From Klebsormidium nitens (lineage: Eukaryota; Plantae; Klebsormidiophyceae): 64,000 nucleotides of DNA. Positions 5,557 through 27,858 of the stretch are shown piece by piece. Each line of letters opens with the position of its first letter. The stretch's first letter is position 1. Below the pieces are notes generated by a model. That model searched no databases and was not told where the DNA came from. It worked only from the letters and a program-made list of their open reading frames with translations. The stretch is taken from assembly GCA_000708835.1 (NCBI GenBank), contig DF237366.1, positions 17,838-81,837 of the forward strand, written 5' to 3'. The translations under genes and the position numbers were made by a program.

Positions 5557-8355
5557 ATGAGTCTGTCAATTACGTTCCTCTCGCTGAATCTGTGCGGGCA
5601 AGATCCCAGCGATGGAAGCAATCCTTGGGCTCGCAGAAAGGAGCTTTGTGTCGACCTACTCAAAAAGTTTCGCCCCATCATCTTCTGTATTCAAGCCGGT
5701 GAGCATCCCAGAGAGGGAAGAAAAGTTAAAAGTACTAATGTTACAAAGTGGTGAAGTAGCAACGATCGGGGGACTTGAAGTTGCTTGATTTGCATAATCT
5801 GCACCTCTGAGACACTTCTGCAGTAAGCCGTTGGTAGCAAAGCTTCTTATCCTTGTCACAAGTCCTGGGGAGTTAGTTCACTGAGCTGGAACTGACACAA
5901 TATCGATTATGCGTGTCTTGCAGGCCTTCATCTCCAGCTTGAGTACTTGAAAGCTTCATTACCAGGCAAGCAGCCAAACACTTAGTGTTTCGTGCCCCAG
6001 CATGACAGAAATATGTATGACCAGGCCAAAGCACTTAAGGCACTGTTAACTGACGAGCAAGTGGATGGAAGGTTGTGACGTTTCCTGCTTGACGGTCGTA
6101 CTCATGCAGCTGGTATTGCTTCTTGTGCAGGATATGACTACTTTGGGTGCTCAAGGAAGGGACCAGATGACAAGGGCGACGAATTTTGTGCAATCTTCTT
6201 CGATGCTACAAAGGTGCGCTTACCTGGTTGTAGGGAACGGTTTTTGCTTGACACTGCGAGCATATTCTAGCCACTGCAGCTTTGGCTTGACTTTATCTTA
6301 CTCCGCACCAAACATCTATCCTCAGAAACTGCTAGGACAGCAAGATTCCGCAGGTCGAGCGACATTTATACAACCTATTATGCTTTCTGGCAGCACTGAC
6401 TGACCTGGTCCGTTTCTTCAAAACCAGATCGACCGAACCGATGGTGGGACCTTCTGGCTTTCAGAGACACCCTCGGTGCCCGGCAGCACGTCCTGGGGTG
6501 CAGCACATCCTCGCATAGCAAACTGGGCAACATTCCAAATACGGCGGCTTCACCCACCTGGTTTTACATTCCAGGTACCGTTGCAACGTTCCCATCTGCA
6601 TTCGAACAATTAATCTACTACGCCGCTGCGGAAAAATCTTAGCTTAAGCTTCGGCCTTTGTACGTTATCGGAGAGAATCCAAATCCTGCCAGCGAACGAC
6701 TGTGCAACTGGCCCCGGCAAGAGAGAAGAACTAATTGAGTATCTTATAAGCGGGTGGGAAACCTTCATGAGTGAACTTCGCATCAAGTGGGTACCAATGG
6801 CACTGTCACTACGGTAGGTTGTTTTGGAAACTGTATGCACAGCCCAACTTATCAGATGTAGAAATGATTCGTGCAAAGCAAGGAAGCGGGGCCTTCTTTC
6901 CGTATCTTTCTCAGGGCGTATGAACCCCAAGCTCTCTATGCTCGAGACGCAGGAACCACGTAATCCTTGCAGGTGATGAATACGCAGCTAGACGACAAGA
7001 GCAGTAATGCAAGGAGGCGCGGTGCCCTTCTTGCTTGGCAGCATGTAGCTTCGCTTCCACCAACACTGCCAGTGGTGTTTTGCGGAGACTTCAACACTGA
7101 TAAAGAGTCCGACGTTGGTCGATTCTTCCTGGGCCGGTCAAGGTGGGTTTCATTTTAAAATCTTCTGAAATCAATCATCCTATCAGCTGTCTCGTACAGT
7201 CAACTTGTCAATCGAGCATAGCGGCTATGTTCAAGAAGCGTTCCCTAGTTCAGTCGAAACCTAGAACTGTCAGGAGCTGTCAATTCTACTTACGAGTCAA
7301 TTCATTTACCTAGTTTTTAAGGACAAGGACAACACATTTTGCAGTCTTCATACTAATGAGCCTAATCTGCTGAAGGTGGCGGGAATACGGTTAGCTATCA
7401 CGGGTTCTTTTTGCAAGGTCAAGTATGACGGAGCTGAATTCATCATACCTCCAGGATGTCTCTTGCATCTCTTGTGGTCGAACAGCCCTTTGAGGAAAAC
7501 TCCGAGGCAGCTTCCCCGGACACCGTCATTCACGAGCAGTTTGGCTTCAATCTGACAGAGGCTTCGGCTAAGATTAGCCTCACTCAGCTTCGCAACTTGG
7601 ATTTCAGCTCCTCGTTTGCCTTTCATGTGTATAGACCAGTACGGCCTTTCTTTTGAATGCAGACTGTTGAACGAAAAAGGCGACTTGCGGGACGCCTGGC
7701 AAAGCGCACGACGGCGAAGGAATGGGGGTATCGTGCACACAAACCATGGTTTTAGAGGTGAGGGATATTGTCTAAGCTAATCTTCAAAGGGCAGAAACTA
7801 CGTGACACTAAACGGGCACTGTGCAAGGATACCGCCTACTAATGATCCGATGCTTACAAACGAAGCAAAGAAACGGTTCAATGAATGATGGTTTGCTTCC
7901 AATTGCTACCACCACAAAAAGGCTTCACTGGACGTCATTGAGGTTGACGAGATCTCTCTCGTTAATAACCTAGCTCTTGAACGGGTTTCTTATCTTGAGA
8001 TCAATGTCATCTCAGAAGTCCTCTGAGTTAAAATTGGCTTTGGTATCGCCAATGCCCACGACTTAGGGAGTTGCAGCCGTGACGACTGTTTCTGGGCCAC
8101 TGTGCAGGGGAGGAACAAGGTTGCTGGGAGTGCTTCAAGCACTTTTACCGGGTCTTCTGCATGTGTTGGGACCGAAACTATCAAGACCTACACAGCGACT
8201 GGGTCTTCTTCAAAGGACGTCAACTGGCCCCCGTCTTTGCCGAAGTTGTGGTGGACAATAAGGAAGGCCGCTTCCCGTCGGATCACTATCCCGTGTACAT
8301 CGAGTTCCTGCTGCCACGCAGCGTACGCCTCCTCGAGGGTTCGCTGGTTGGTTGA
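5557..8355 (+). CDS. Endonuclease/exonuclease/phosphatase (DNase I-like) family protein, plant At4g30900-like; 7 exons, intron 2 is GC-AG
   Basis: The spliced product contains LSLNL..NPWARRKELC, GTFWLSETPSVPGSTSWG, VMNTQLD...ARRRGALLAWQHVASLPPTLPVVFCGDFN, CWDRNYQDLHSDW and PSDHYPVYIEFLLPRSVR. All exon phases are consistent. Confidence 0.88.
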
Positions 8356-9610
8356 GCGGATGAAGAAGCTCGAAGAATCGACAAGGCATGCAATGACAAG
8401 GGACCCACGGAACTGTAGGATCGACGTCGCAAACGGCTCGATCCATGGTATAAGCAGGGAAGCGGACGGACTTGCACATAAGATCTGCCCGGCATACATG
8501 CTGAGGATTGAAATAAGTATAATCTTACTTCGTCCTCCGTCGTGAAGGTCGAAGGTAAAGCTCCCGCTGGAACGCCCCTAGATTGCTGCTTCGCCTAGAC
8601 ATGCGAGCTGACCCAGCTTATCTTGTTACAATAATAGTATGGCCCCGGCATTGAGGGCCAGGCCGCGCCATCCAATCTCGTAGAAAGATGGCGTATATCG
8701 TAAACACACCTGAATGCGCCTGGCGATTCAAGGGCGGCGCGACGCAGCTTCAATCGTATAAAGTTTATGAATGTCTACCGAAGCTAGCTGTACGCTCTTT
8801 CAATTGGAGGTAAGCCTTTTATTTGTTAGTCCGTATCCTCAACAGCCTGTCGAGAGCATATACATAGACTCAGCTTGCGACTAGCTCGCGCGCTACGTAC
8901 CCTACTTTTCCTTCAATCGAGATATTGCATGCGTGCTGCATGTTGCACACGCGCATTATCTGAGGCTATAGCTGATAAAGCGTGCTGAGCGATCGCATAC
9001 TGCCCACCGTTCCCCGCGCAAGCAAGCCTATCGAAGCTCTTCGATATTCCATGCAATTAGCCGGTCAGTGTACATGTACCGTATACTAGATGCATGATAT
9101 AACCGCACTCAGTGCAGTTGGAAAATATAGCCATGATATCCTGCATGAGAGACTTCATGGTATATACGTTGCATGACAGACAGTGATACTTGTCACTACA
9201 GCTGCATTATATGCAACGCGTTCAACGAAAATGCAGCATGTCAAGATTTCTGGCGCTGTGCTACGTAGATCTTGCACCGCCGCGATTGGCTAAGTTTTGC
9301 GCATCAACGACTGAGTCAAGGTCGCGGCCACACTAGAAGACCAATACGTGTGCGGATGTAATTTATAGCAAACACTTATTCCCATGTTCAACAATGGACT
9401 ACGGGGCCGGATTTATTACAGGGTTGTTACCACTCTTTCATACCTTTATGACCCCGTACGAAGCGTGATACAAGTCATTGACGAGAAATGAAAACGGTAA
9501 AAGGAGCAAACACATATAGTATGATCGTTTGAATGAGCATTTTTGGGACAAGAGCAGAATGAACGTGTTTTGGTGCTGACTAGGTGAACATATACTACTG
9601 TCAACCACTA

Positions 9611-12082
<2,472 letters not shown>

Positions 12083-15000
12083 ATGGATGGCATGGCGCCA
12101 GCAAATCTTTTGGAAGAGGTAGGCTGATCGAATCCGCCTTGTTCCATTTGGTATTACTGGTGCGTACCACCGTATCATGCTTGCGGAATGCATGGAGATG
12201 ATGCAGCTGACCTCTTAACTGAGGGGACGAGTGCAGAACCTTTCAAAGCTTTCTAATGAGCTGTGTTGAGAGCAATGCTGTGAGCATGGCAACCACCTCT
12301 GAGCATGAACTCAGTATCTAAGAAATCTCGAAGTATACAATGACTGAAAGAGACCATCACCTTCAAGCAGCCTCAGATGCGGACGATTATTTGGTGGTGG
12401 TTGTGTGGCTGCATGCTTGCCACCTGCTTGAACTGGGTGGCACTATCTGATCAGCTCTCTCTTTGCTCCAGGTGCCGAGGCTCACCACCATGCTAAGAGC
12501 CTATGGTCCTGAGCGCCACCACCCTTTTGATGTTTATGAACAGTTCGTGCGTAGAAAGTCAATCCTCGAGGAGTATCAAAGAAGGTGAGTTGCTTGCGCT
12601 CTCTTTGGGTGAGCGGATCTTTAGTATTCCACTTGAGGTGGAGTTATCAAAGATAGTCACAAGGAGCCCAGGCAGTTGTTGATGACTAGATGAAGTGGTG
12701 GAACGTGTCTCAGCAGAAAAGTAGAGGGTTTCTGATGGGCTTCTGGGCAGAATCATGTCCACGTTAGCGGATGGTGCTACGCAGCCCATTTCGCAGATAG
12801 GTTGCTTTCGGCGGAGCATGACCAGAGGCTTGTTTGAGCTTGCAGGGCAGCAAATCAGAAGTCTGCTGTGGGCGCATCCGCTCTGGCGCGCAAGTTGATT
12901 CCACACTGGGACACAGGTACACAAGCGCTCTTTTCCCTTGATTATGGCTTCGAGCAAGCCTTTTGCATCCCCTTCCAGTGGGTTTGTTATCTGATCATAT
13001 GCAGAATTGACTGTTCGAGGTGACCTTGATGCATGAAAGTATGGCATCGATTGTCTTTGTACCCTTTTGTGTTGCAGCCCCGCATGCCGCTCGTGAGGTG
13101 TACGAGCAGTTCCTTGGGGCTGCCCGGGAATTGTTGGGAGGGGAGCCGTCGTCGGAGGAGCTGCATCAGTCGGCAACCCTCATCTATGAAAGCCTTGCAA
13201 ACCTGGAGCTCAATGAGAGGGGGCAGTTTGCTCGTTCTGACCTTGCGGACAAGAGGTAAGAGGAGTACCTGTCGGAGCTGCTTTTGAAAGCACACAAGCA
13301 TGAAGGGTTGATTGGAGGCAACCACATGCTTTTTTCCTGCCTCTTTCCTTGCCCCCTGCAGACATTGATTGTTTCTAGTCAAAAGTGTGCTACAGTGGCT
13401 GCTGCCAGGCACGAGGTATGGTGCAAGCCATCCCTTCTTGTTGTGGTGCAGGGCGGACCTGGTGTCCATCTTTGGCACCCTCACTGAAGGCCCTGTTTTC
13501 AGTGCCACCGCCCACCTGGTGCTCCAGCTGCGAGACTGGGCAGCTAAGCTCAGGAGCACGGGTGAATTAGAGGTGCCCACACCCAGCCGCGAGTTCCGGG
13601 ACACCCTTGGCTACGATGCCCAACCAGGCAACAGGGACGGTGTCAACGGGGCCTCTGAGTCGGAGGAGTGGTGGGAGGACGACGAGGATGATCTCGACAG
13701 CTGGGGCCTTCCGTCGCCCCCGGGAACAGCTGCGCCGGCTCCCCACCCTGGCCAGGGCATGCTCGAGCAGACCGTGGTGCCTCACCGTCCAGGGACGCCA
13801 GGGCCGGAGGGGGGGCCCGATGGCACTTCGTGGGCTCAGCTGGAGTCGCCGGGCATGGAGGAGAAGGATCCGCTGGTCTGGTTGCAGCAGCAGTGCCAAG
13901 CGGCGAGTGCCCTGGGCGGGGCAGGGGCGTTCCGGGGCGATGAGCTGGCGCTGAACGTGCTGCGACTGCTGGACAGCGAGGGGTCGGGGGATGAGGTGGC
14001 AGGGGACCTGCTGGACCTGCTGGGAAACGGGGGGGTCGAAATCATCGAGGAGCTGCTGCAGCGGAGGAAGGCCATCACGGATGCGGCGAAAAAGGCCCTG
14101 TCGGCGCTCAAGTCTGTGGACGACGAGGGCAAGGCGCAGCAGCAGCCCAGGATGCCCAGCTACGGCACGCAGGTATGGAGCAGCACCATGCATCTCAAAG
14201 CCTGGTGGTGGGGGTTTCAAAGAGGTGGCCCGCTTTTCTGGTTTACGCAGCGGCAGTGATCCCTTTTTGACAGAAGGAGGGTTGGATGACCAGCCTCGAA
14301 GCTAGCAAGGCTGTGGCCTTTTGAACAGTATGGGCAGACGTCGCTTGAGACATAGCCTCGTAGGGAATGATGGTTGAGACAAGCGATGGCCACATTCACT
14401 CTTTCGGCAGGGGGCTACTGGGGCACTGGCGTCCCGAGGACCAAAAAACCACGGGTTCTTGGTTGGCCTTTTAAATCTGCAACTAGATCCATGAGAAACA
14501 GGCCCCCAGTGCGTGTGCTTGCTGTCTGTGGCTTTGGACTGGGGCCTGTGTGTCCTGCAGTACACATGTCATTTGAACATAAGGATTAATGCAGCCCCCT
14601 CTGCTGAATTCACAATGAACAGGGGGTTCCCATGAAAGCACCGTTGTTCGAGGTGCTTTGATCTCGCCTCTTGCCGCTTGTTTGCATGGCGCATGCAACG
14701 GCCTGTTTCTTGCCGCTTTCAGGTGAGCGTGCACACCGACTCGGACCGCGTGTTGGACAAGCTGCGACGCAAGGAGGAGAAGCGGCAGGCGCGAGCAGGA
14801 CATGCGTCGGGCAAGGGCGAGTCGGACTGGGACTGGCTGGCGGGGGCGGGGGGGTTCGTGGCGCTTCTGGACGTGGGCTTGGGAGCGAGGGGCGTGATCG
14901 ACAGTCTTGTGGGCAGAGGGGAAGACGGCTTCGGCAGCCTGGGCGTGAACGCGCGGGCGCTGCCCAAGGGGACCATGCGCAAGACGTTCAAGGGGTACGA

Positions 15001-18000
15001 GGAGGTGCACGTGCCCGCCACGCCGACCGCGGAGATGTTGCCGCAGGAGCGGCTGGTCAAGATCGAGGAGATGGACGAGTTTGCGCAGCTGGCCTTTGAA
15101 GGATATACCACGCTCAACCGCATCCAGGTCAGCGTCGTCGTCTGTGTGAACTCGGCCCACTCTTTCATTATCATCATTTCTGAACCTTACAGTGTAGAGT
15201 CAGGGGTGGTTGCACATAAAGACTAGACATTTTTAGTCCCCTGACTTTGGTTTTTGTGAACGGCGTTCCAGACGACCTGGAAAGCTTCGTCGCTCAACAG
15301 AACCCCTTTCGGCCTGCGCTGCTCTCCTAGGCGAGTTCTAATCTGGTCTCTGTTTCTGCTTGACCAGAGCCGCATCTACCGCACGGCATACTTGAGCAAC
15401 GAGAACCTGCTGGTGTGCGCCCCGACGGGCGCGGGCAAGACCAACATCGCCATGATCGCGGTGCTGCACGCGGTGAAGGCGCACATGGTGCACGGCGTGC
15501 TGCAGAGGAAGGACTTTAAGATCGTGTACGTCGCGCCCATGAAGGCGCTGGCGGCTGAAATGACGCGCGCGTTCGGGCACCGCCTGGAGCCGCTCGGGAT
15601 GGTCGTCAAGGAGCTCACCGGCGACATGCAGCTCACCAAGCGCGAGCTGGAGGAGACGCAGGTGCGCCGCCGAAGCCAGCACGCCAGGCGCTGAGCGCGG
15701 GGGAAACAAAGTTTGCCTTGACTTTGCAAAAGGGCAGCATCAGACATCATTAGGTCCTGCCTTCGCGGAGGCTTTGTGTTGTCTGCAAATCCTGGAATGA
15801 TCTGGGCTTCTGAAACTTCGAAGGTGGAACGAGGAGCATTACTCAAACCACTGTCTTCTGCGCAGATGATCGTGACGACGCCCGAGAAGTGGGACGTGAT
15901 CACGCGCAAGAGCAGCGACGTGGCGCTGGCGACGCTGGTGACGCTGCTGATCATCGACGAGGTGCACCTGCTCAACGACGACCGCGGGCCCGTCATCGAA
16001 ACGCTCGTCGCCAGGACGCTGCGCCAGGTCAGCCACCCGCGCCCGCGCCGCACTGCAGCTGCCCCGGCAAAGTTGCCACTCGCCGCTGAAAAGCGTGCAG
16101 TTGGAGCCCGTCTGTTGGAGCATGTTTTCGTCAGCTGCCTTACTCCCACTCGGGGTTACATGAGCCCGTCCCTGGACCCTGTATAAGGAAAAGCAGATTT
16201 GCCTAAGCTCGGGCTACTGACCTGATGTTTGCACTGGGGGTGGGGTGACAGGTGGAGGCGACCCAGAGCATGATCCGCATTGTGGGCCTCTCCGCGACGC
16301 TGCCCAACTACAAGGAGGTCGCGCACTTCCTGCGGGTCAACCTGGACACCGGCCTCTTCTACTTCGACTCCAGCTACCGTCCGGTGAGCAGCCCGGCCGA
16401 CGCAACCCCGTGTGTTCATTACCTGGCCGCTAGTTACCTCGCCGCTAGGAAATGTTGTTGCCTTCAGCACACGCATCTCTCTTGCGCCAGGAATTTTATG
16501 TAGTTTGAAGTATGATAGACATGATCTCGAATTTCAGACGCTCCGTGAACGAACTGCAAGTGCCCGCGTTCTCGAGCCAAACCCATGACGGTTTCCGTTG
16601 CGTCCTCTTCTTCCTTTCTGACCCGCCGACCGCCGTTATTTGTGCAGATTCCGCTCCGGCAGCAGTACATTGGCGTGAGCGAGCAGAACTACGTGACCCG
16701 CAACACGCTGATGAACACCATCTGCTACGAGAAGGTTGTGGGGGCGGTCAAGGACGGCAAGCAGGCCATGGTCTTCGTCCACTCCAGAAAGGTGAAGCAC
16801 CCTGCGCTGCTGGGGACGGCGAGCACAAACGGCGATCCATCCTGAGGAACCAACGGGCCAGTTTTGTGTTGAACGGGTTGTCCTGTCGTGAAGCTAACGC
16901 AAAAGATTTGCAAAGGCGTGCCTTTTTTGCGACCGTAAGCATCAGCCGCAGTTTGGCGAAGCCTTTGATGGCAGCTTCGTCCTCTCCTCTGCCGGCATCG
17001 GACTCTCAACCCTTTCCACCCCCGGCTGACAGGACACGGTGAAGACTGCGCGCATCTTGGTGGAGCTGGCGGCGCAGCGCGGGGACGTGAGCCTGTTCGA
17101 GCCGGAGGCGACGGAGCAGGCGGGGCTGTGGAAGAAGGAGGTGGCCAAGTCGCGCGCGCGCGAGATTTCGGAGCTCTTCGCGTCCGGCTTTGGCACGCAC
17201 CACGCCGGCATGCTGCGCTCCGACCGCAACCTCACCGAGAAGCTCTTCAGCATGGGCCTCCTCAAGGTGGGCGCGCGGCATGACCGCGAACGGCCTTTCT
17301 CGGAGGACTACTTCGCGTTAACTATCTTAGAAAGTCACAAAGCTGGGTCGAGAAGGGGATTAAAGCCTTCAACGCTGTTTGGCTGAGCTCCTTGCTGGGG
17401 TTGGCTTCTTCCTGACCAGAAACTCTTTCACCACAAACCCTCTCAAAGGAGGGTCGACCGTTCATAGGATAGAGAATGGGACTGCTGTCCTGTGTTGTTT
17501 GTCTCAGCCGCCGTGGGTGCGGTTCTCGGTGCAGGTGCTGGTGTGCACGGCGACGCTGGCGTGGGGCGTGAACCTGCCGGCGCACATGGTGGTCATCAAG
17601 GGCACGCAGCTGTACGAGCCCAAGGCCGGCGGCTTCCGCGAGCTCTCCATGCTCGACGTCATGCAGGTGACCGCACGCTGCCACTCGCAGCTCGACATGA
17701 CGCCGTCTGTGCGCTAAAAACAAAGGGAGAGCTGGAATCTATCACGAGATTGAGACTGAGAGTGCAAGTGCGGCTAAAGCCTGCTCAGGCATCAACGCAA
17801 GAGGCTTTTGCTGTAAAACTCGCTTGCGCGTTAAGCTTTATGAATCTCAGTCGCTTCGCCCCCATTCTCGTTTCTCATGTTGCGCATCGGTTGCTCTGTA
17901 CATGCGCATCTAGGCATTTGTAATCAGGCTTTTTGAAGGCTGCAACTCCTGACCTGAGCAGGTCTACCTTTATATCAGCTCAGCTTCTTGCTTCTGCATC

Positions 18001-21000
18001 CCGACGTGCAGATTTTTGGGCGTGCGGGCCGCCCCCAGTTCGACACGAGCGGCGAGGGCATCATCATCACGACGCACGACAAGCTGGCGCACTACCTGCG
18101 GCTGATGACGCACCAGCTGCCCATCGAGAGCCAGTTCATCGCGTCGCTGCGGGACAATCTGAACGCGGAGGTGGTTCTCGGCACCGTGACCAACATCAAG
18201 GAGGCCATCACCTGGCTCTCCTATACCTACCTCTCCGTGCGAATGCGCATGTGAGCCCCGACCCGCCCCCACTCGGCTCTTTGCTCCTGTTCAAGGTCTC
18301 CTGACCCAAGTCTTTGTGACAGTTTGCTCTGGTCAGGCTCAATTCTTGCTTGGGAAGGTTGACTTTGCCGAAAGCCTGCCCAGCACGAATGCGGTTGCTA
18401 ACACGGAAGCTTATCTTGTGCTGTCTTGGGTCTCCACGGCAGGGTTTTCAGCCGGCATAAAAGGCCGATGACCAAAACTTTGTATTTGGAGGAGTCTTTG
18501 ACGGGACGGGTTTGTGAAGCGGCGCTTCTTGGATTATACTACTTGAGTATGTTGGGCGTCCACTTCGAGGGTTTTTACCCCACTCACGTGGCTGACGAGC
18601 GGTCGCTTGGTGTGTGCGCGCAGCAACCCGCTGCAGTACGGCCTGACGTGGGAGCAGGTGGCGGTGGACCCGTACTTGGCGAGCCACAAGAAGGAGCTGC
18701 TGACCAACGCGGCGCGCGACCTGAACGCGGCGCAGATGCTGCGCTTCGACGAGCGCACGGGCAACCTGTACGTGTCGGAGCTGGGCCGCGTGGCCAGCCA
18801 CTTCTACCTGCAGTACACCAGCGTGCAGACCTACAACGAGCTGCTCAAGAAACACATGAGCGACTCCGAGGTGCGCCGCACGCCAGCACGACATGCGAGC
18901 TTGCGAAACCTGGCCTTTAGCATAATCTGTCCGCTTGTCCGTTCGTGCTCTGCGGCATTAGTAGAATTTAGTCAGATGCTAACATACGAAGAGATACGTC
19001 TATTGGTGACAGCCACAGTCCGCATGGCTTAGTATCGAGCTCTCTGCGGGGAGTTATGGGTTTTTAAACCGACTTGATAGAGCTAACTTCAGTTTTGGCT
19101 GGTGAGTTGCAAGTGTTCTCCTTTGGGGCCTTGTGCCGCCGCTGCTGACGCGCACGGGTGTGGGTTGTAGCTGGTGTACATGGTGGCGCGCTCTTCCGAG
19201 TTTTCGAGCATCGTGGTGCGCGAGGAGGAGCAGCCCGAGCTGGAGACGCTCATGCGCAAGCAGTGCCCGCTGCACGTGCGCGGCGGCGCCGAGGACAAGC
19301 ACGGCAAGATCAACATCCTCATCCAGGCAAGCGGCGCGGCCCCCCCCTCTGTGCGCGAGGCGGCCCCTTGCTGTAAAGAAACGCAGCTCGCGGCTTATTG
19401 CACTGTGAACCGCCAACGACAGTCACTTGTGTGCGTCTCTACAATTTGTATGCCTATTCGTAGACGTTGAGAACAAAGGGCTATTACTGGCGACCTCTGC
19501 CCTTCCGCGGGTGTTTGCTTTCAGCAGTTTCCTAACGGCTGGTTGTTTGTGGTGGCAGGCCTTCATTGGGCGCGCGCGGCTGGAGAGCTTCTCGCTGGTG
19601 GCGGACAGCGCGTACATCAGCCAGAGCATCGGGCGCATCACACGCGCGCTGTTCGAGATCTGCCTCAAGAAGAGCTGGTGCACCCTGGCATACCTCCTGC
19701 TGCAGTACGCCAAGGTCAGCGCCGCGCGCCGTGCACCGCCCACGATTCTTTTGTCTATTTGGAGAACTTTGCGCAGGGCACATCAGGGGTCATCTGGAGT
19801 GGCTATCCTGGAGCTGGCAGGGAGTCATTGTGAGGTCCCGCAAGTATTGCCTACGGGGTTTACTCGCTTTTTGATCTGCTGTAAGCTTCAGAGGTAGTAA
19901 GATCCGGAGTTCTCGGTATACGCAGGCGGTGGAGCGGCGGCTGTGGCCGCACCAGCACCCGATGCGGCAGTTCGAGACAGTGCTGTCGCCGGAGGTGATG
20001 AGCAAGCTGGAGGAGCGCGCGCCCGACTTCGAGCAGCTCTACTTCGAGATGGACCAAAAGGAGGTCGCCGAGCGGATCCGCAACCCGCACGGGGCCAAGG
20101 CAAGCAACTTCCGACGCTTCTCGCTGCTTCCATATGCACCGTTTTGCTTCTGAGCAATCTTTGACGGTGGGGAACCACTCACCGATATTGACGCCTGAGC
20201 GATGTGGCGTTCGTATGCTAACCTCGTAAAGTCGTCGGTTCCGCTGGCAGCGGCCTGAGCGGGTTTGTCTTTCCTGGTGCGCAGCTGGTGATGCAGGCGC
20301 TGCGCAACTTCCCGCACTTGGAGCTGGACGCGAGCGTGAGCCCCATCACGCGCAACGTGCTGCGGGTCACGCTGCGCCTCTCCCCGCACTTCGAGTGGAA
20401 GGACCGCCTGCACGGCACCGTTGAGCGGTGGTGGATCTGGGTCGAGGTCAGCGCGCAGCCGCCACTCAACCTGCAGCAGTCTGAAGAGCGCCAGTAGCTG
20501 ATCGTTCTGGCCTCTAATGCTGCTTTTTCCATCTTGTTTATCGTCCTATTTTTTGTCCCCAGCCCAATTTTCTTTTTACTGTTTCCGCTGACCTTTGCGC
20601 ACCAACTCGCTGTTGGCTCTCCCGCTTCACTGCAGCCCGGCTTAGGCTTTCCTCTTCCGGATGTGCAGGACTCGGAGAACGAGCACTTGTACCACACGGA
20701 GTACTTTTTGCTGACCAAGAAGATGATGGCGGAGACGACGCACGCGATCAGCTTCACGATCCCCATCTTCGAGCCGCTCCCCCCGCAGTACTACATCCGC
20801 GTCATCTCCGACACGTGGCTCGGCGCGGAGACGGTGCACGAGGTGTCGTTCAAGGGGCTCATCCTGCCGGACCAGCACCCCCCTCACACCGACCTCCTCG
20901 ACTTGCGGCCCCTGCCGCTCGCCGCGCTGCGCAACGCGCAGTACGAGGCGCTGTACCGGTTTACCCACTTCAACCCCATCCAGACGCAGGCGTTCCACAC

Positions 21001-24000
21001 GCTGTACCATAGCGACGCGAACGTGCTCCTGGGTGCGCCCACCGGCAGTGGCAAGACCATCTCCGCGGAGCTGGCCATGCTGCGCCTCTTCGCCGCGCAC
21101 CCCGGCAGCAAGGTGATCTACATCGCGCCGCTCAAGGCGCTGGTGCGCGAGCGCATCGACGACTGGCGGCGCAACCTGGTCCCCGCGCTGCGCAAGAGCA
21201 TGGTCGAGCTCACCGGCGACTTCACGCCCGACATGCGCGCGCTGCTGGCCGCCGACATCATCATCTGCACGCCCGAGAAGTGGGACGGCATCAGCCGCAA
21301 CTGGCAAAACCGCAGGTGGGGGACTGTTCCTGTTGAGAACGTTCCTCGGCTGCTGACTGTGCGGGATCTTGATTGACACAGCCTGAATGGAAGTTCCTAA
21401 AGCAGGGCAGTACTTCCCCAGGTTAAGCTGGTGCGAAATTCTGGATCACGGGTCTTTGGTTGGGCTGTGCAAGAGCTTGCCGACTGCCCAAAGCGAAAAG
21501 GGGTATGCTGACGCCTTCGCACGCTTCTGCAGCTACGTCCAGAAGGTGGGCCTGATCGTGATCGACGAGATCCACTTGCTGGGCGCGGACCGCGGGCCCA
21601 TCCTGGAGGTGATCGTGTCGCGCATGCGGTACGTGAGCAGCCAGACGGGCGCGCCCATCCGGTTCGTGGGCCTCTCCACCGCGCTCGCCAACGCGCGCGA
21701 CCTCGCGGACTGGCTCGGCATCGAGGAGCGCGGGCTGTTCAACTTCAAGCCCAGCGTGCGGCCCGTCCCGCTCGACGTTCACGTCCAGGTACGGCCACGC
21801 GCATGAGGCAACGTACACGGCCACGCCCGACGCCTGCGCGCGAGTTCACATAGTCGCCTTTTCGGGTCAGAAAGTTGCATTTATTTTGTGGCGTTTGAAT
21901 TATGATATGAGTGGCTCGGCGTCTCTCCAGGAGCTGCTGTCAAAGTTTGACAGGGGACTCACTGGTCCGCGGCGGCTGCTCCTCGCAGGGGTACCCCGGC
22001 AAGTTTTATTGCCCGCGCATGATGAGCATGAACAAGCCGACGTACGCGGCCATCAACCAGTACTCGCCCTCCAAGCCCGTGCTCGTCTTCGTCTCGTCGC
22101 GCCGCCAGACCAGGCTCACTGCGCTGGACCTTATTCAGGTGAACAACTTCGGTGCACGAATTCCCATGCAACTCAGGCGCAGGGCCCTTGCTGAACGAGA
22201 AGTAACATCCGGCAGGAGTTTCTTGTCACGTTGTGTCTTAGGTGCGCTTGCTGGTACTTGTTACAGCGGCAGTCAGCAAAATGAGACGTGCGCAGGCCTG
22301 CTTTGAACACTAATTTTTGCAGCCGGTTTTCTTCGTTTTTGTTCTGCCAAGAAGTAACATCGCCGACATGACGTCACGACCAGTCAAGGCCGTTCAAGGA
22401 ATTCAAGCAGCGGTGTGATGTCCGTGTGTGCAGTTTGCTGCTGGCGACGAGCGGCCGCGGCAGTTCGTGAACATGGCGCAGGAGGAGGTGGAGGCGGTGG
22501 TGGAGCAGGTCAAGGACGGCAGCCTGAAGCACACGCTGCAGTTCGGCATCGGGATGCACCACGCCGGCCTCAACGAGCGGGACCGAACGCTCGTCGAGGA
22601 ACTGTTCGTCAACAACAAAATCCAGGTGCCCCTCACAACAACAGCTCCCGCAATTGGATCCGGGAAGCGTATCTAAGTTCTCATCTTTCTACGTCTTTGC
22701 GAAGGAGAGGTTATCCAGCATCTTGAGGTTTACGAGTTGGCAAACGCACACCAATTTACTGGAGGGGTGAAAGCAGCCGGGGTCATATTGCGCTGCGTCC
22801 TTGCGTGAGATGCGCGGCATGCCATCCGCAGATCCTGGTGTGCACGAGCACGCTGGCGTGGGGCGTCAACTTCCCGGCGCACCTGGTGGTGGTGAAGGGC
22901 ACGGAGTACTACGACGGCAAGAGCAAGCGGTACGTGGACTTCCCCATCACGGACGTCCTCCAGATGATGGGCCGCGCGGGGCGGCCGCAGTTCGACGACC
23001 ACGGCGTGGCCGTCATCATGGTGCACGAGCCCAAAAAGAGCTTCATCAAAAAAGTGAGCGGCCGCGGCCGGATGTGAAGAGCACGGAATCTGTCTCTCTT
23101 TCGGGCTGGAGAAGAACCTCGGCCGTTGGTCCAGCCACTAGGTCCCTTTTGGAACCGCATCGTCTGCTTCTGCTGGTTGTTGCATCACCAGAAACCAGCT
23201 GCACCTTGAGCGCATCGTAGGGGCCGCTGTGGCGGGCTGTGCTTAGGTCAATCTGCACAATGTGCAGTTCATGTACGACCCGTTCCCGGTGGAGAGCAGC
23301 CTGCCGGACGTGCTGCCGGACCACGTGAACGCGGAGGTGGTGGCGGGCACCATCGGCAGCACGCAGGACGCCGTCGACTACCTCACCTGGACCTTCTTCT
23401 ACCGCCGCCTCGTGAGCGCTCGGCCTCGCATCTGGCCATGTTCGTATAGTGCAAACATTCCATGCTCTAAACTTTGTGCTCCTGATTCTCCTGGGGCGCG
23501 GAAATAAGTGTCCTGTTAGACCCTTCTTCCTGAGGACCTTTATCGAGATCTCTGAATCCCGCTGGTGACTTGGCGGCTGAATTTTGGAGCAGGTACCTGG
23601 ACAATCAGCCGTTGATCTGACCGTTGGCACTGCGCTTGGCCAGGTGATGAACCCGAGCTACTACGGCCTGGCCGAGACGAGCGCGGACGCCATCAACGCG
23701 TTCCTGTCGGGCCTGGTGGGCACGACGCTGGGCGTGCTGGCCGACGCGGGGTGCGTGCGGGTGGAGGCCGACGGCAGCGTGGAGCCGCTCATGGCGGGCC
23801 GCATCGCGTCCTTCTACTACCTGCACTACGCCACCATGACGCTCTTCAGCGCAGCCATCCGCGCGGACACCCTGCACCAGGTCAGCGCGGGGCGCGGCCA
23901 GCAGCCAGCGCAAGCTGTGCGCACTTCTGGCTCGCCGCTGGCTCTGCGCATGAGTATTCACGTGGACAGCCGTGCTTGGCCGCCAGATATCTGTTTTTCG

Positions 24001-26283
24001 TCACTTCATGTCACATTCGAGGTGGCGATCATTGTTGCATTTCTCAGCGATACCACTTCGTTGACCGGCTTACGTTCTGGTGACCGGATAGAGACCGCAC
24101 CGTGCGTTCCGGCCGCTGACTGTGCCTGCCGTTTTGCTGTTTGCAGGAGGTGCTGCGCATTTTGTGCGGTGCGTCCGAGTACGACGAGCTGCCGGTGCGG
24201 CACAACGAGGACAAACTGAATGCGGAGCTGGCGGGCGTGGTGCGCTGGCCCGTGGACGCGCGCGCCCTGGATGACCCGCACATCAAGGCCAACCTGCTGC
24301 TGCAGGTGACACCCGCGGGGCCTGTCGCACAGCATGACCATGCCCCTCGCTGCTGGCCCGCTGGGGATTGGAGATGCCGGGTCGGGACGGGGGGCCCTAT
24401 GACCATTCGTCTGTTTTGCAATCGAGCACCGAGTCGGTCTGGCCTTTGGCGGTTTGCGAGGCTCTCTCGGTTCCTTCCTAGGTGTCCGCTCGAGTCTCAT
24501 CAGTGGAGCGTCGTGCGTTGCTGCGCAGGCGCACTTTTCGCGGCTGGCGCTGCCGGTGTCGGACTACATCACGGACACCAAGTCGGTGCTGGACCAGAGC
24601 ATCCGCATCCTGCAGGCCATGGTCGACATCGCCGCGCACGGCGGCTGGCTCGCCACCACGCTCCACGTCATGCACACCCTGCAAATGGTGCTCCAGGTCA
24701 GGCGCCGCACCGCATGCAGGCCGGCGTGCTCCGGCGGGGGTAGCCGCAAAGTCCTGTCCTTCTCAGAAAACGATTCGAGGGGGAATAAGCCGGGGGCCAT
24801 CGTTTAGCCTGCGCTCTTTGATGTCCAGAGTCGTAGGCTGAGCACCACGTAGTGTCCCGCTCTCCGCCAACAAGCCGTTGCCTCGTAAGGGACCAGTATT
24901 TCGCTCTTGGCCCCTTCTATCTTAAAGCGCCGCTTGAAGAGACAAAAGAAGTTACTTGTTACTTTTTGTTTCCTGACCCAGTCGCTCCCCGTTGCAGGGC
25001 GCTTGGCACGACGAGTCCGCGCTGCTTTTCCTGCCCCACGTGACTGCTGACGTCGTCCAGCTGCTGGCTGCGCGCGGCATCCGCGGCCTGCCCCAGCTCA
25101 TGGCGCTCTCCGCGGACCGGATCCGCGACTGGCTGCGCGCCCTGCTCACCCCGCCCGAGATCAGCGACCTCCTGCAGGTAGGCGCCCGCAGCAGTGCCGC
25201 CGTTTGTTTGCCAGACCGGGACAAAAGTATCCCGCGTGGCTATGGCCCTGCTACACGTGACTCAGCTTTTGATGATCTGGAAGTCCCCAACCCCAAATTC
25301 AGAACATTGGACGGCGGCGCCAAGAGCACCCGTTGCTTCGTTGGTCACCCCGGCTGCTACGACGTGTCCCTAAGAGCTCCGCTCCCGTGAGCTTTGCCTT
25401 TCGCACGCCCGCCCACCACGGCTTGCAACGCACCTGCTTGTTTCCCCACCCCCTCTCACGCCGTCCCTCGTCGCTGCGTCCTCAGGCTTTGGCGCGCCTC
25501 CCTCGGGTCAGCGTCCAGTGCGCCCTGAAGCCAGCCTCGGGCGACAGCCAGCAGGTGGAGGTGCACCTGACGCGGCGGCGGGTCGGCCCTGGGCGGCCCG
25601 GGTCGGCCAAGGGGTGCCGCGCATACGCGCCCCGCTTCCCCAAGGTCAAGGAGGAGGGCTGGTGGCTTGTGGTGGGCACACCCCACACGCACGAGCTGCA
25701 CGCGCTGAAGCGGGTCACGCTCGCCGACAGGCTCACCACGCGACTCACCATCCCCCGCCTTCCCTCCGACTCACACCAGGTGCGCGAATCGAGGCTAATG
25801 CAGGGTGGCACTATCGTCGTGTCTGCTTGCGGTGCAGGCAACGGCAGGTGATAGTTTCAAATCGTGGTCCGGTTGCTGTGCTTGTCACTTCCGGCTCCTA
25901 GTCGAGACGCTTCCTAGTGATGGGCCTGGCTGCCCTGGTTCCCTGGCGGCCCTGTGACGACTTTGCCCGTGTCGAATGCGCAGGAGCTGCGGCTGCACCT
26001 GGTGTCGGACTGCTACCTGGGCCTCGACCAGGAGCACGGCCTGCACCAGCCAGCAGACGCCGCGGAAGGGCCCTCCACGTCTGCGCAAGGCGCCGCCAGG
26101 AGCCGCAACGGGCAAGTCAGTGCCACAGGGCCAGCCACAAGTACCAACGGCGATGGGGAAAGCAGAAGACATGACAGTAAGGGGTCTGCCACAGGCTGGG
26201 CGATGCCCCACGTTGATGGCCGGGGGAAGGATGAGGAGGATGACGACGCTGAGGAAACCTTCTTTGATGCTTCCGAGGACTGA
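12083..26283 (+). CDS. ASCC3: ASCC3/Slh1-type tandem Ski2-like helicase with Sec63 domains (plant DExH14); about 30 exons, two GC-AG introns
   Basis: Two helicase cassettes: [30 protein letters not shown] and [29 protein letters not shown]. The N-terminal VPRLTT...PFDV and the C-terminal [18 protein letters not shown]...LVSDCYLG match DExH14/ASCC3 rather than BRR2. The start exon [12 protein letters not shown] (12083-12118) is inferred from splice phase. Confidence 0.95.
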
Positions 26284-27858
26284 GGTGGCGGGGGGACTGA
26301 AGGTGCCTGTTTTCAGTGCAGCTGACCCAAGAAAGGGTATGCTGCAACCACCATCGCAACCTAACTCCGGTTGGAGAAGGTCAAATAACCAGTTGACGCG
26401 CCAAAGGACTCCCTCCTTCGGGAATGATCTTTCAAAAGCATCGGTCATTTAAAAAAATCCTCTGTATTTACTCTCGCCTCGAGTGATTGAGCATGAGTGA
26501 ATTTCAATGAACATGAATGCACGAGATGTTCGCGTCCAGGTTCTTCTGCATTGGCCTGAGCATGTACATTTGGGCTCCTCAAAATAGAGCCAATAGTGCG
26601 TCTGTTGCATTTTGACGCGTATGATGCAGTCTGACACACGAGACCAATGTGCATATAGGATTCTAAGCGGGTTAACATACGCCGAGGCACTTCGATCATA
26701 CTTACACATGTCTAATGTCTGAACGCGGTGAAAACAAAGTATGATCTCACTTCGCTGAGCTCTTGAGTAGGTAGTTGCTTTCACTGTGTTGGTGAGCACG
26801 TCCTGGCGGCCAACACGTGGCCACCACATGCACTTGTTTTGCAATGGCAGCCGCCGGATCATGCATATGGCTGCCTATTGCGCAATTTTCTTTTATGGTC
26901 ATTGAAGATTTCTTGAGCATGCCCTCAAATCTAGTATGTTGCACACTGACTTTTGGATGGTTCTAACTCCTAACTAAATGCATAGCGGCCGCTGCAAGGC
27001 CAATTTTGCGCAAAAGCTGCAGCACTTATATATTCGAGCCGCAATAATAGGATCAATGCACATGATTGCTAGTCGGATCTGCGCTAAGGCTCCTCGTGCC
27101 AGCCGTGTGCCAGCCATTGTATATACGTCGCGATCTTTGATTACATGAAGCTCCAAAAGACGACGGACTCAATGTTTGCCGCCAGAATGCTGGATAGGCC
27201 GCGTCTGGCAACATCAAGTCGACCGAGGGTACGTGTTCTTTTTCAAACATCGAATCAGCTAGCAACTTCAATATGCGTTTGTTTGTGGGCACGCGGGCTT
27301 GTGAAAACGTGAACATGAAGGATCGTTTGCACCAAGCTCCGAATACCAGGACTCAAGAGCCCCACTGAGTGCCCCGTACGCGCACGTACCTGCGACATGT
27401 GCAGCGATCGGCTGCGGCAGTTGGGCAGGCCAGCACTGCAGTCACTGCGGCCGGCCTTGCGCGGCCGGCTCTCATTTTCGCCAGAACTTCTGGGCCAATC
27501 AGCGAGCTCTATTTGCCTTCTCAAGTTGGACATCTGAAACGTCGATTCCAGTCGATTGTGTTTGCTTTAGACGGTCAGGATAAGGTCTGCACGCGCGGGC
27601 CGATCACCATGCGAATTCAAATACAAATTTTGCGTTGTCGAACCGTCGAATTCCTTCTAGGCTGAATTCCATCTAAATCTGATACACGGCCTCCGACGCC
27701 GGAACTTGAGGTTGGAGTGGGTTGGACTGCTGGGATCTGCAGTCTGGACTCTGCAAGGAACTCTGCTGCAGAGTCCAGATAGTACCGGTAGCTCGGACTG
27801 CCTATAAATCAATCTTTCGCAGCTCATTCCAGCATCAGCTCCAAAGTTCCTCCTTTGA

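What the first reader, a model, noticed from the sequence alone, without database searches (positions are those of the whole stretch)
26230..26283. FFAT (VAP-binding, ER-tethering) motif at the extreme C-terminus of the ribosome-rescue helicase ASCC3
Seen in sequence: after the last Sec63 strand ([13 protein letters not shown]) the protein continues for about 85 disordered residues and ends in [17 protein letters not shown]. Established: the FFAT consensus is an acidic tract followed by EFFDAxE, it binds the MSP domain of VAP/Scs2/VAP27 on the ER, and ASCC3/Slh1 splits collided ribosomes in the RQT complex. As recalled, Arabidopsis DExH14 ends shortly after the Sec63 domain with no such tail. 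Inference: this lineage may tether RQT to the ER through VAP, coupling ribosome quality control to ER-bound translation. I know of no such link for ASCC3.
Basis: partly seen in the sequence, partly recalled or inferred. Interest (0 to 1): 0.7.

Follow-up and report, generated by a model that had tools for sequence, protein, structure and literature searches.

The report
FFAT-type tail motif on algal ASCC3
The ribosome-rescue helicase ASCC3 of this probable streptophyte alga ends in an expressed, conserved, near-perfect copy of the short motif that docks proteins onto the ER receptor VAP; this points to ER-anchored ribosome rescue, but binding has not been tested.

Summary
The last exon (25984-26283, +) encodes the final Sec63 strand, an 81-residue tail and ...[17 protein letters not shown]-stop.

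- **Expression:** spliced transcript contigs from four studies cover the exon through the stop with no internal joint.
- **Gene identity:** it is an ASCC3/DExH14 orthologue. It has a DExH14 plug and two DEAD+Sec63 cassettes, and matches human ASCC3 better than Brr2.
- **Motif quality:** it scores 0.5 suboptimal elements on the published 2012 FFAT table. The human proteome holds only 7 such motifs. None of 200,000 tail shuffles reaches that score.
- **Conservation:** three relatives keep FFDASE, with synonymous codon changes, while the rest of the tail diverges almost beyond alignment.
- **Absence elsewhere:** 120 angiosperm DExH14 proteins and one uninterrupted ORF (taken to be a transcript) in the same tree clade end 7-19 residues after Sec63 and have no motif.

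There is a serious rival. Many chlorophyte-like ASCC3 tails carry conserved acidic "FW" motifs that fail FFAT rules, so this may be a local form of a green-lineage motif with another partner.

No paper in the library links ASCC3 to FFAT. I rate it a new variant of known kinds, of moderate interest.

The parts
26257..26277 (+). FFAT core, T1 F2 F3 D4 A5 S6 E7
   Evidence: Sequence. It scores 0.5 suboptimal elements. FFDASE is invariant in the window, P0154, L001/P0155 and L002, with synonymous changes at F2, F3, A5 and S6.
26230..26256 (+). Acidic tract DEEDDDAEE directly upstream of the core. The six flank residues DDDAEE give a charge value of 5.
   Evidence: The relatives keep an acidic flank with other residues: DDGAEE in L001 and EEDAGE in L002.
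26278..26283 (+). Final Asp codon and TGA stop
   Evidence: Transcript contigs run through it into the 3' UTR.
26038..26229 (+). Low-complexity linker of the tail ([11 protein letters not shown]...VDGRGK), predicted disordered
   Evidence: AlphaFold2 on the four-sequence alignment gives no secondary structure, mean pLDDT 55.9 and pTM 0.11. It diverges strongly in L002.
25984..26037 (+). Start of the last exon, [18 protein letters not shown]: the last strand of the C-terminal Sec63 (FN3) unit
   Evidence: The motif SDxYxGxDQ ends the Sec63 unit in 53 homologues. The joint 25779|25984 is seen in four runs.
26284..26475 (+). 3' UTR. Transcript contigs end at 26431, 26458, 26462 and 26475.
   Evidence: table 8.
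25780..25983 (+). Last intron, 204 nt, GT..AG
   Evidence: table 5 (joint 25776>25981, cut +3).
25486..25779 (+). Penultimate exon, beta-sandwich part of the C-terminal Sec63 unit
   Evidence: Pfam Sec63, E 1.3e-09. Relatives: P0001 at 93% and P0002 at 70% identity.
13011..26283 (+). ASCC3/DExH14 gene, about 28 or more exons. The 5' end is approximate: the first recognised exon is the DExH14 plug at 13011-13256.
   Evidence: Pfam DExH14_plug, E 3.2e-10. DEAD, ResIII, Sec63 and wHTH domains. Collinear tblastn with the 2153-aa homologue P0108 from 13873 to 25752. Human ASCC3 8alz_B scores 385 bits against 303 for SNRNP200.

Best explanation
The gene at about 13011-26283 (+) encodes the orthologue of ASCC3 (yeast Slh1, plant DExH14), the helicase of the RQT complex. 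In this alga and its close relatives the protein carries an extra, roughly 80-residue disordered tail after the last Sec63 strand. The tail ends in a conventional FFAT motif: an acidic tract followed by TFFDASE.

The most likely mechanism has three steps. The acidic tract is attracted to the basic face of the MSP domain of an ER-anchored VAP (VAP27-type) protein. F2 and A5 then insert into the conserved pockets. [quoted passage not shown]

Thr at position 1 lies in a casein kinase 2 (CK2)-type context (T-x-x-D), so phosphorylation could supply the canonical acidic residue.

Shown here: the motif exists, is transcribed, scores as top class, lies in a predicted disordered tail and is under purifying selection in the clade.

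Inferred: VAP binding, ER localisation and a link to ER-associated ribosome quality control.
For: - **Scoring tool.** The table comes from PMC3261905 Table S2A. My script reproduces five scores published there.
- **Scores.** The window, P0154 and P0155 score 0.5; L002 scores 1.0.
- **Human benchmark.** In the human proteome only 7 motifs score 0.5 or less and 15 score 1 or less. Twelve of those 15 were already known VAP binders.
- **Chance.** 0 of 200,000 tail shuffles reach 0.5.
- **Selection.** FFDASE is invariant across four sequences with synonymous differences. The remaining tail is almost unalignable with L002, and the last exon is 45% identical overall, mostly in the Sec63 strand.
- **Disorder.** The tail is predicted unstructured.
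- **Expression.** The tail is present in spliced transcripts of four studies.
- **Position 1.** Plant ORPs use TFFDT-D, and position 1 is free in plants (PMC3261905).
- **Plant VAPs.** Plant VAP12 binds FFAT motifs through the conserved MSP residues (PMC11631713).
- **ER role of ASCC3.** ASCC3 is needed upstream of UFMylation (UFM1 conjugation to the 60S subunit) at ER-stalled ribosomes in human cells and Arabidopsis (PMC13144351).
- **Free C-terminus.** In the yeast RQT-ribosome structure the only direct contact of the C-terminal cassette with the 40S is WH-RACK1, so a tail after the FN3 domain should be free (PMC9938168).
Against: - No binding, localisation or co-folding test was possible. 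No VAP gene of this organism could be retrieved.
- Only four clade members are known, and three are close. L002 is the single well-diverged witness.
- Ser at position 6 is free in FFAT yet also invariant, so divergence time may be short or another constraint may act.
- Other green-algal ASCC3 tails carry conserved acidic FW/FFW motifs in the same position. One of them (P0036) has the same spacing to the C-terminus. They score 3 to 5.5 and so fail FFAT rules. This argues for an older acidic-aromatic motif with a different partner.
- Other streptophyte-clade sequences sampled lack the tail, so the function is dispensable in the wider group.
- I used the 2012 scoring table. The later matrices (2016, 2019, 2020) could not be obtained.
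Confidence: 0.5

Rival explanations
1. The motif is the local form of an older green-lineage C-terminal acidic-aromatic motif of ASCC3 (an acidic run followed by FW, FFW or FF). Its partner would not be VAP. It could be a basic surface on the 40S subunit or RACK1, another RQT subunit, or a trafficking or motor adaptor. On this view the FFAT likeness is partly coincidental.
For: - Conserved motifs occur in the tails of many chlorophyte-like or marine picoeukaryote ASCC3 orthologues: DTFW[IAL]LPP...EPFWLGE, NFWQDEDE, DPFFWE[NG]E and DDDAFFWENEA-stop.
- They often come in two or three copies per tail.
- P0036 has FF followed by five residues and the stop, exactly as in the window.
- They score 3 to 5.5 on the FFAT table.
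- In the tree the FW-tailed sequences cluster and need as little as one change of label, though that branch is weakly supported at 62/80.
Against: - In the window clade D4, A5 and E7, which matter for FFAT but not for a generic acidic-aromatic motif, are all invariant. W never occurs.
- The score of 0.5 is far better than any FW-type tail.
- A few other lineages do have FFAT-like versions: EFEDAQE at 1.5 and EFWDAEG at 2.0. The FW class and FFAT may therefore overlap rather than exclude each other.
- Homology of the tails cannot be shown because they do not align.
Confidence: 0.3
2. The acidic-aromatic tail acts within the same molecule. It would be a nucleic-acid mimic or plug that folds back on the helicase cassette and regulates it, as plug domains and inserted tails do for the related Brr2.
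For: - The family has an N-terminal plug domain (Pfam DExH14_plug).
- From general knowledge, not tested here: Brr2 is regulated by an N-terminal plug and by the Prp8 Jab1 tail entering its RNA channel.
- An acidic tract plus aromatics could mimic RNA.
Against: - AlphaFold2 of a natural C-terminal cassette with an FW tail (L082, 900 aa, 28-row alignment) leaves residues 813-896 at pLDDT 27-46, not docked. The cassette itself is well modelled at pTM 0.68.
- The window's own tail is modelled as a coil.
- The test was done on another lineage, without the N-terminal cassette, and with a shallow alignment. It is weak evidence.
Confidence: 0.07
3. It is a chance FFAT look-alike in a neutral acidic tail and has no function.
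For: - Acidic C-terminal tails without aromatics occur in other ASCC3 orthologues, for example the EEEEDDE runs in L063-L080.
- The first-stage scan looked at very many windows, so some chance matches are expected somewhere.
Against: - 0 of 200,000 composition-matched shuffles reach the score.
- Six contiguous residues are conserved, with synonymous changes, against a tail that otherwise diverges.
- The best score anywhere in 120 angiosperm orthologues is 3.5 or worse.
Confidence: 0.05

Closest known systems
Conventional FFAT motifs of VAP clients (OSBP/ORPs, CERT, VPS13A/C, Opi1; plant ORP1c TFFDT-D)
   Same: It has an acidic tract followed by x-F-F-D-A-x-E in an unstructured, conserved segment. 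It scores 0.5, in the range of validated motifs. T at position 1 matches Arabidopsis ORP1c (PMC3261905).
   Different: The carrier is a ribosome-rescue helicase, not a lipid-transfer or membrane-tether protein. The motif sits one residue from the C-terminus. Binding is untested.
ASCC3 / Slh1 (Rqt2) / plant DExH14, the helicase of the RQT (ASC-1) complex
   Same: It has a DExH14 plug and two DEAD-WH-Sec63 cassettes. It is collinear with a 2153-aa homologue, matches human ASCC3 best, and sits in a tree clade with angiosperm DExH14.
   Different: It has an extra 81-residue disordered tail with the motif. The 120 angiosperm DExH14 proteins end 7-19 residues after Sec63, and one uninterrupted ORF from the same clade ends after 8.
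ER-associated ribosome quality control (ZNF598 and ASCC3 splitting, then RPL26 UFMylation)
   Same: ASCC3 already acts on ER-stalled ribosomes in human cells and Arabidopsis (PMC13144351). An ER-enriched pool would serve the same pathway.
   Different: No ER-targeting element of ASCC3 is described there. ER specificity is ascribed to the UFM1 ligase on the 60S subunit. Here the helicase itself would carry an ER address.
Num1 C-terminal FFAT binding Scs2 in yeast (PMC11116812, abstract seen)
   Same: It is an FFAT motif in the C-terminal region of a large non-lipid-transfer protein, used to bring its machinery to the ER.
   Different: Num1 is a cortical tether for mitochondria and dynein and is unrelated to translation. 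That interaction is experimentally shown.
Acidic FW/FFW tail motifs of chlorophyte-like ASCC3 orthologues
   Same: The protein and location are the same: a disordered tail after the last Sec63 strand, close to the C-terminus. An acidic run precedes an F-aromatic pair.
   Different: W replaces the second F or follows FF. Positions 4 and 5 break FFAT rules. The motifs are often present in several copies. The partner is unknown.

Membership tests
Conventional FFAT motif | Acidic tract in the six residues upstream (charge value 4 or more for no penalty) | tested here: met
   DDDAEE gives 5. Relatives: DDGAEE gives 4 and EEDAGE gives 4.
Conventional FFAT motif | Phe or Tyr at position 2, the key pocket residue | tested here: met
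   F in all four sequences.
Conventional FFAT motif | Aromatic or hydrophobic residue at position 3 | tested here: met
   F in all four sequences.
Conventional FFAT motif | Asp or Glu at position 4 | tested here: met
   D in all four sequences.
Conventional FFAT motif | Small residue (Ala or Cys) at position 5 | tested here: met
   A in all four sequences, coded GCT or GCC.
Conventional FFAT motif | Acidic residue (or Ser/Thr) at position 7 | tested here: met
   E in all four sequences.
Conventional FFAT motif | Position 1 acidic or a tolerated substitute. This is the least constrained position. | tested here: met
   T costs a 0.5 penalty and V in L002 costs 1.0. [quoted passage not shown]
Conventional FFAT motif | Lies in an unstructured segment | tested here: met
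   AlphaFold2 gives no secondary structure and mean pLDDT 55.9, with only four sequences in the alignment. This is a prediction, not a measurement.
Conventional FFAT motif | Key residues conserved in orthologues relative to the flanks | tested here: met
   FFDASE is invariant while the tail diverges, and synonymous codon changes occur inside the core. Only four sequences are known.
Conventional FFAT motif | Exposed to the cytosol | not testable with these tools
   Inferred only. ASCC3/Slh1 is a soluble protein that binds cytosolic ribosomes (PMC9938168).
Conventional FFAT motif | [quoted passage not shown] | not testable with these tools
   No multimer prediction was available and no VAP sequence of this organism was to hand.
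Phospho-FFAT | Ser or Thr at position 4 that must be phosphorylated | tested here: not met
   Position 4 is Asp, so the motif is of the conventional, constitutive type (definition in PMC7705450).
ASCC3 / Slh1 / DExH14 | Two tandem Ski2-like cassettes (RecA pair, winged helix, Sec63) | tested here: met
   Pfam DEAD, ResIII, SNRNP200_wHTH and Sec63 hits on exons of both halves. Collinear tblastn with P0108 residues 249-2118.
ASCC3 / Slh1 / DExH14 | N-terminal DExH14 plug domain | tested here: met
   PF24557, E 3.2e-10 at 13011-13256.
ASCC3 / Slh1 / DExH14 | Closer to ASCC3 than to the paralogue Brr2/SNRNP200 | tested here: met
   Human ASCC3 scores 384.8 bits, SNRNP200 303 and yeast Slh1 300 for exon 20600-21330. 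The gene is in a clade with named angiosperm DExH14, support 99/96.
ASCC3 / Slh1 / DExH14 | Splits collided ribosomes within RQT | not testable with these tools
   Inferred from orthology.

The most novel reading that the evidence does not exclude
A lineage of streptophyte algae gives the RQT helicase its own ER address. A C-terminal FFAT motif docks ASCC3 on VAP, so collided translocon-bound ribosomes are split by a pre-positioned helicase.

More broadly, green-algal ASCC3 proteins carry an ancestral C-terminal acidic-aromatic docking motif (FW, FFW or FF) that places ribosome rescue at a defined cellular site and was lost on the way to land plants.
Probability: 0.35. Interest if true: 0.7.

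Novelty: new variant of a known kind. Interest (0 to 1): 0.55.

Why it matters
ASCC3 is required for quality control of ribosomes stalled at the ER in human cells and Arabidopsis (PMC13144351). No element that brings the helicase to the ER is known.

A natural ASCC3 with a canonical, conserved VAP-docking motif would be the first case of a ribosome-rescue factor carrying a membrane-contact-site address. It would also give a simple handle, the FF-to-AA mutant or tail deletion, to ask whether local enrichment of RQT at the ER matters.

As of 2024 no endogenous plant protein with a functional FFAT motif had been described (PMC11631713), so this would add a green-lineage client.

The recurrent acidic FW motifs in other algal ASCC3 tails point to an undescribed docking interaction of the RQT helicase.

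Tried and rejected
**Scoring matrices.** The newer FFAT matrices could not be obtained. Table EV4 of PMC7705450 is not held. Murphy & Levine 2016 and Slee & Levine 2019 are not held. I used the 2012 table instead.

**More clade members.**
- Exon-wise protein searches found only P0154 and P0155 for the last exon.
- They found only P0001 and P0002, plus one distant hit, for the penultimate exon.
- The metagenome scan returned 80 loci, none closer than 47% identity.

**Taxonomy of the hits.** The listing of cluster members gave no organism names. The atlas search gave only generic Sec63 clusters.

**Non-angiosperm streptophytes.** The region search with Citrus DExH14 listed only angiosperms among its best 120.

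**Host VAP.** There is no note of an MSP or VAP27 gene in this genome.

**Fold-back of the tail on the cassette.** AlphaFold2 of L082 left the tail undocked.

**Other motif classes, checked by eye against consensus patterns recalled from general knowledge and rejected.**
- LIR/AIM: needs [WFY]xx[LIV]; FFDA fails.
- PIP box: no Q or hydrophobic residue upstream.
- AP-2 FxDxF and DP[FW].
- MLH1-binding S[YF]F: needs basic neighbours.
- PTS1: the protein ends SED.
- Rev1-interacting FF motifs and the FFD/TFG boxes of LSm14 cannot be excluded by sequence alone, but nothing supports them.

**Literature.** There is no paper with ASCC3 plus FFAT. Papers with ASCC3 plus VAPB only co-mention the two in gene lists. 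None of the 12 top-ranked of 471 papers matching at least two of FFAT and the ribosome-collision/RQC terms contains FFAT.

Full report
**Observation.**
- The + strand at 26230-26283 encodes [17 protein letters not shown] followed by TGA.
- It is in frame with [18 protein letters not shown] at 25984-26037.
- The tail after ...DQEH is 81 residues.
The core TFFDASE is 26257-26277.

**Gene identity.**
- Exons on the + strand carry Pfam DEAD, ResIII, SNRNP200-type winged helix and Sec63 domains in both halves of the gene.
- The exon at 13011-13256 matches the DExH14 plug domain.
- A 2153-residue homologue (P0108) aligns collinearly from 13873 to 25752.
- The exon at 20600-21330 scores 384.8 bits with human ASCC3 (8alz_B). 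It scores 303 with SNRNP200/Brr2 and 300 with yeast Slh1.
- In a tree of the region encoded by the penultimate exon, the window groups with two relatives (support 100/95). That group sits inside a 13-row clade holding named angiosperm DExH14 proteins (99/96).
- The tree rests on 101 columns and is rooted at the midpoint. The streptophyte affinity is therefore supported, not proven. It agrees with an earlier unchecked note (s1-316313).

**Transcripts.**
- Nineteen runs hold at least half of the sampled words of 25300-26500.
- I laid the contigs of four runs from four studies on 23000-27500.
- All four show the same seven GT..AG joints, so these contigs derive from spliced RNA.
- The last intron is 25780-25983.
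- The last exon is covered without a joint or a variant from 25984 to 26431-26475. This runs through the stop and into about 150-190 nt of 3' UTR.
- Small low-depth contigs inside introns look like traces of unspliced RNA.
- The refutation "transcripts splice out or end before this tail" therefore fails.

**Motif quality.**
- I took the scoring table of Mikitova & Levine 2012 (PMC3261905, Table S2A) and coded it. The script reproduces five scores printed in that paper.
- The window scores 0.5; the only penalty is Thr at position 1.
- That paper counts 7 human motifs at 0.5 or less and 15 at 1 or less. Twelve of the 15 were already known VAP binders.
- It also reports TFFDT-D in Arabidopsis ORP1c and free variation at position 1 in plants.
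- 0 of 200,000 shuffles of the tail reach 0.5, and 3 reach 1.0.
- No other motif scoring 2 or less exists in the 96,086 residues of stop-free translation of the window.
- The best score anywhere in 120 angiosperm orthologues is 3.5.

**Conservation.**
- An exhaustive profile search with the penultimate exon found two close relatives. P0001 is 93% identical (E 8.8e-54) and P0002 is 70% identical (E 9.7e-36).
- Their contigs (L001 from a Logan run, L002 from a JGI metagenome) carry a downstream last exon. It ends ...[14 protein letters not shown]-stop in L001 and ...EEDAGE-VFFDASE-GHLAA-stop in L002.
- A third relative, P0154 (ENA), ends like the window.
- FFDASE is invariant across the four sequences. 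Its codons differ synonymously at F2, F3, A5 and S6.
- The linker is nearly unalignable with L002.
- This is the signature of a short linear motif under purifying selection. It rests on four sequences, only one of them distant.

**Distribution.**
- 120 angiosperm DExH14 proteins end 7-19 residues after the Sec63 strand.
- L007 is a 950-codon uninterrupted ORF in the same tree clade, which I take to be a spliced transcript. It ends LDQEHQIRGAA-stop.
- Outside that clade, many chlorophyte-like and marine picoeukaryote orthologues do have tails. These carry conserved acidic FW motifs: DTFWxLPP...EPFWLGE, NFWQDEDE, DPFFWENE and DDDAFFWENEA-stop.
- These score 3 to 5.5 and fail FFAT rules.
- A few other lineages come close to FFAT: EFEDAQE at 1.5 and EFWDAEG at 2.0.
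- P0036 has FF, five residues and the stop, as in the window.

**Structure.**
- AlphaFold2 models the window's last exon as a coil (pLDDT 55.9, no secondary structure, four-row alignment).
- A natural C-terminal cassette with an FW tail (L082, 900 residues) is well modelled (pTM 0.68). Its tail stays at pLDDT 27-46 and is undocked.
- There is thus no sign of a fold-back plug, within the limits of that test.

**Mechanism.**
- The best-supported reading is a conventional FFAT motif that docks ASCC3 on the MSP domain of ER-anchored VAP proteins.
- Plant VAP12 binds FFAT motifs through the conserved MSP residues (PMC11631713).
- ASCC3 acts on ER-stalled ribosomes in human cells and Arabidopsis (PMC13144351).
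- In the yeast RQT-ribosome structure the only direct contact of the C-terminal cassette with the 40S is WH-RACK1, so a tail after the FN3 domain should be free (PMC9938168).
- Binding, localisation and the presence of a VAP in this alga are inferred, not shown.
- Unchecked notes report FFAT-like motifs in PITP, VASt and VPS13 proteins of the same genome. If true, they suggest a working FFAT-VAP system.

**Main rival.** The FF motif may be the local form of an older acidic-aromatic tail motif with another partner. Invariant D4 and A5 and the absence of W in the window clade argue for FFAT. The positional likeness to FFW tails argues for the rival.

**Novelty.**
- No paper in the library holds both ASCC3 and FFAT.
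- None of the 12 top-ranked of 471 papers matching at least two of FFAT and the ribosome-collision/RQC terms contains FFAT.
- ASCC3 and VAPB co-occur only in gene lists.
- This is a known motif class on a known helicase in a new combination, limited so far to one algal clade.

**Left out.**
All searches were exon by exon, by reference.
- The organism's name was coded in the run table and I did not try to uncover it.

Noticed in passing
L003-L082 (e.g. L003:2-2971, L030:2-3010, L082:3-2702, L051:2-3094); P0036, P0117, P0107, P0014, P0091: ASCC3 orthologues of chlorophyte-like and marine picoeukaryote origin carry conserved acidic FW/FFW motifs, one to three per tail, after the last Sec63 strand. 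Examples are DTFWxLPP..EPFWLGE, NFWQDEDE, DPFFWENE and DDDAFFWENEA-stop. They fail FFAT rules and I found no description of them; the partner is unknown.
   Followed up: partly
window 26185-26200 (ATGWA) and the aligned place in L001, P0154 and L002: A second small conserved patch lies in the tail about 25 residues before the FFAT core: A-x-G-(W or QF)-A. The aromatic residue is kept in all four sequences.
   Followed up: no
window 24680-24931, 25153-25512, 25810-25964: Short low-depth contigs (2-6x, against 24-224x for the spliced form) lie inside introns of the ASCC3 gene in three runs. They are probably traces of unspliced pre-mRNA or weak intron retention.
   Followed up: no
window about 6000-8400 (+): A multi-exon gene upstream of ASCC3 has an Endonuclease/Exonuclease/phosphatase domain (Pfam PF03372, E 9e-06 at 6964-7155). 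The exon at 8083-8352 ends in the typical ...SDHYPV... stretch of that fold.
   Followed up: partly
P0003 (419 aa, hit): A fragment with the Sec63 strand segment (PRFPRGKNEGWFVTLGTADNQELHALKR) repeated about four times. It may be an assembly artefact or a tandem duplication in an unknown organism.
   Followed up: no
window 1-64000: G+C alternates between about 49% (intergenic, or the left 12 kb) and 58-65% (gene bodies such as ASCC3 at 13-26 kb).
   Followed up: no
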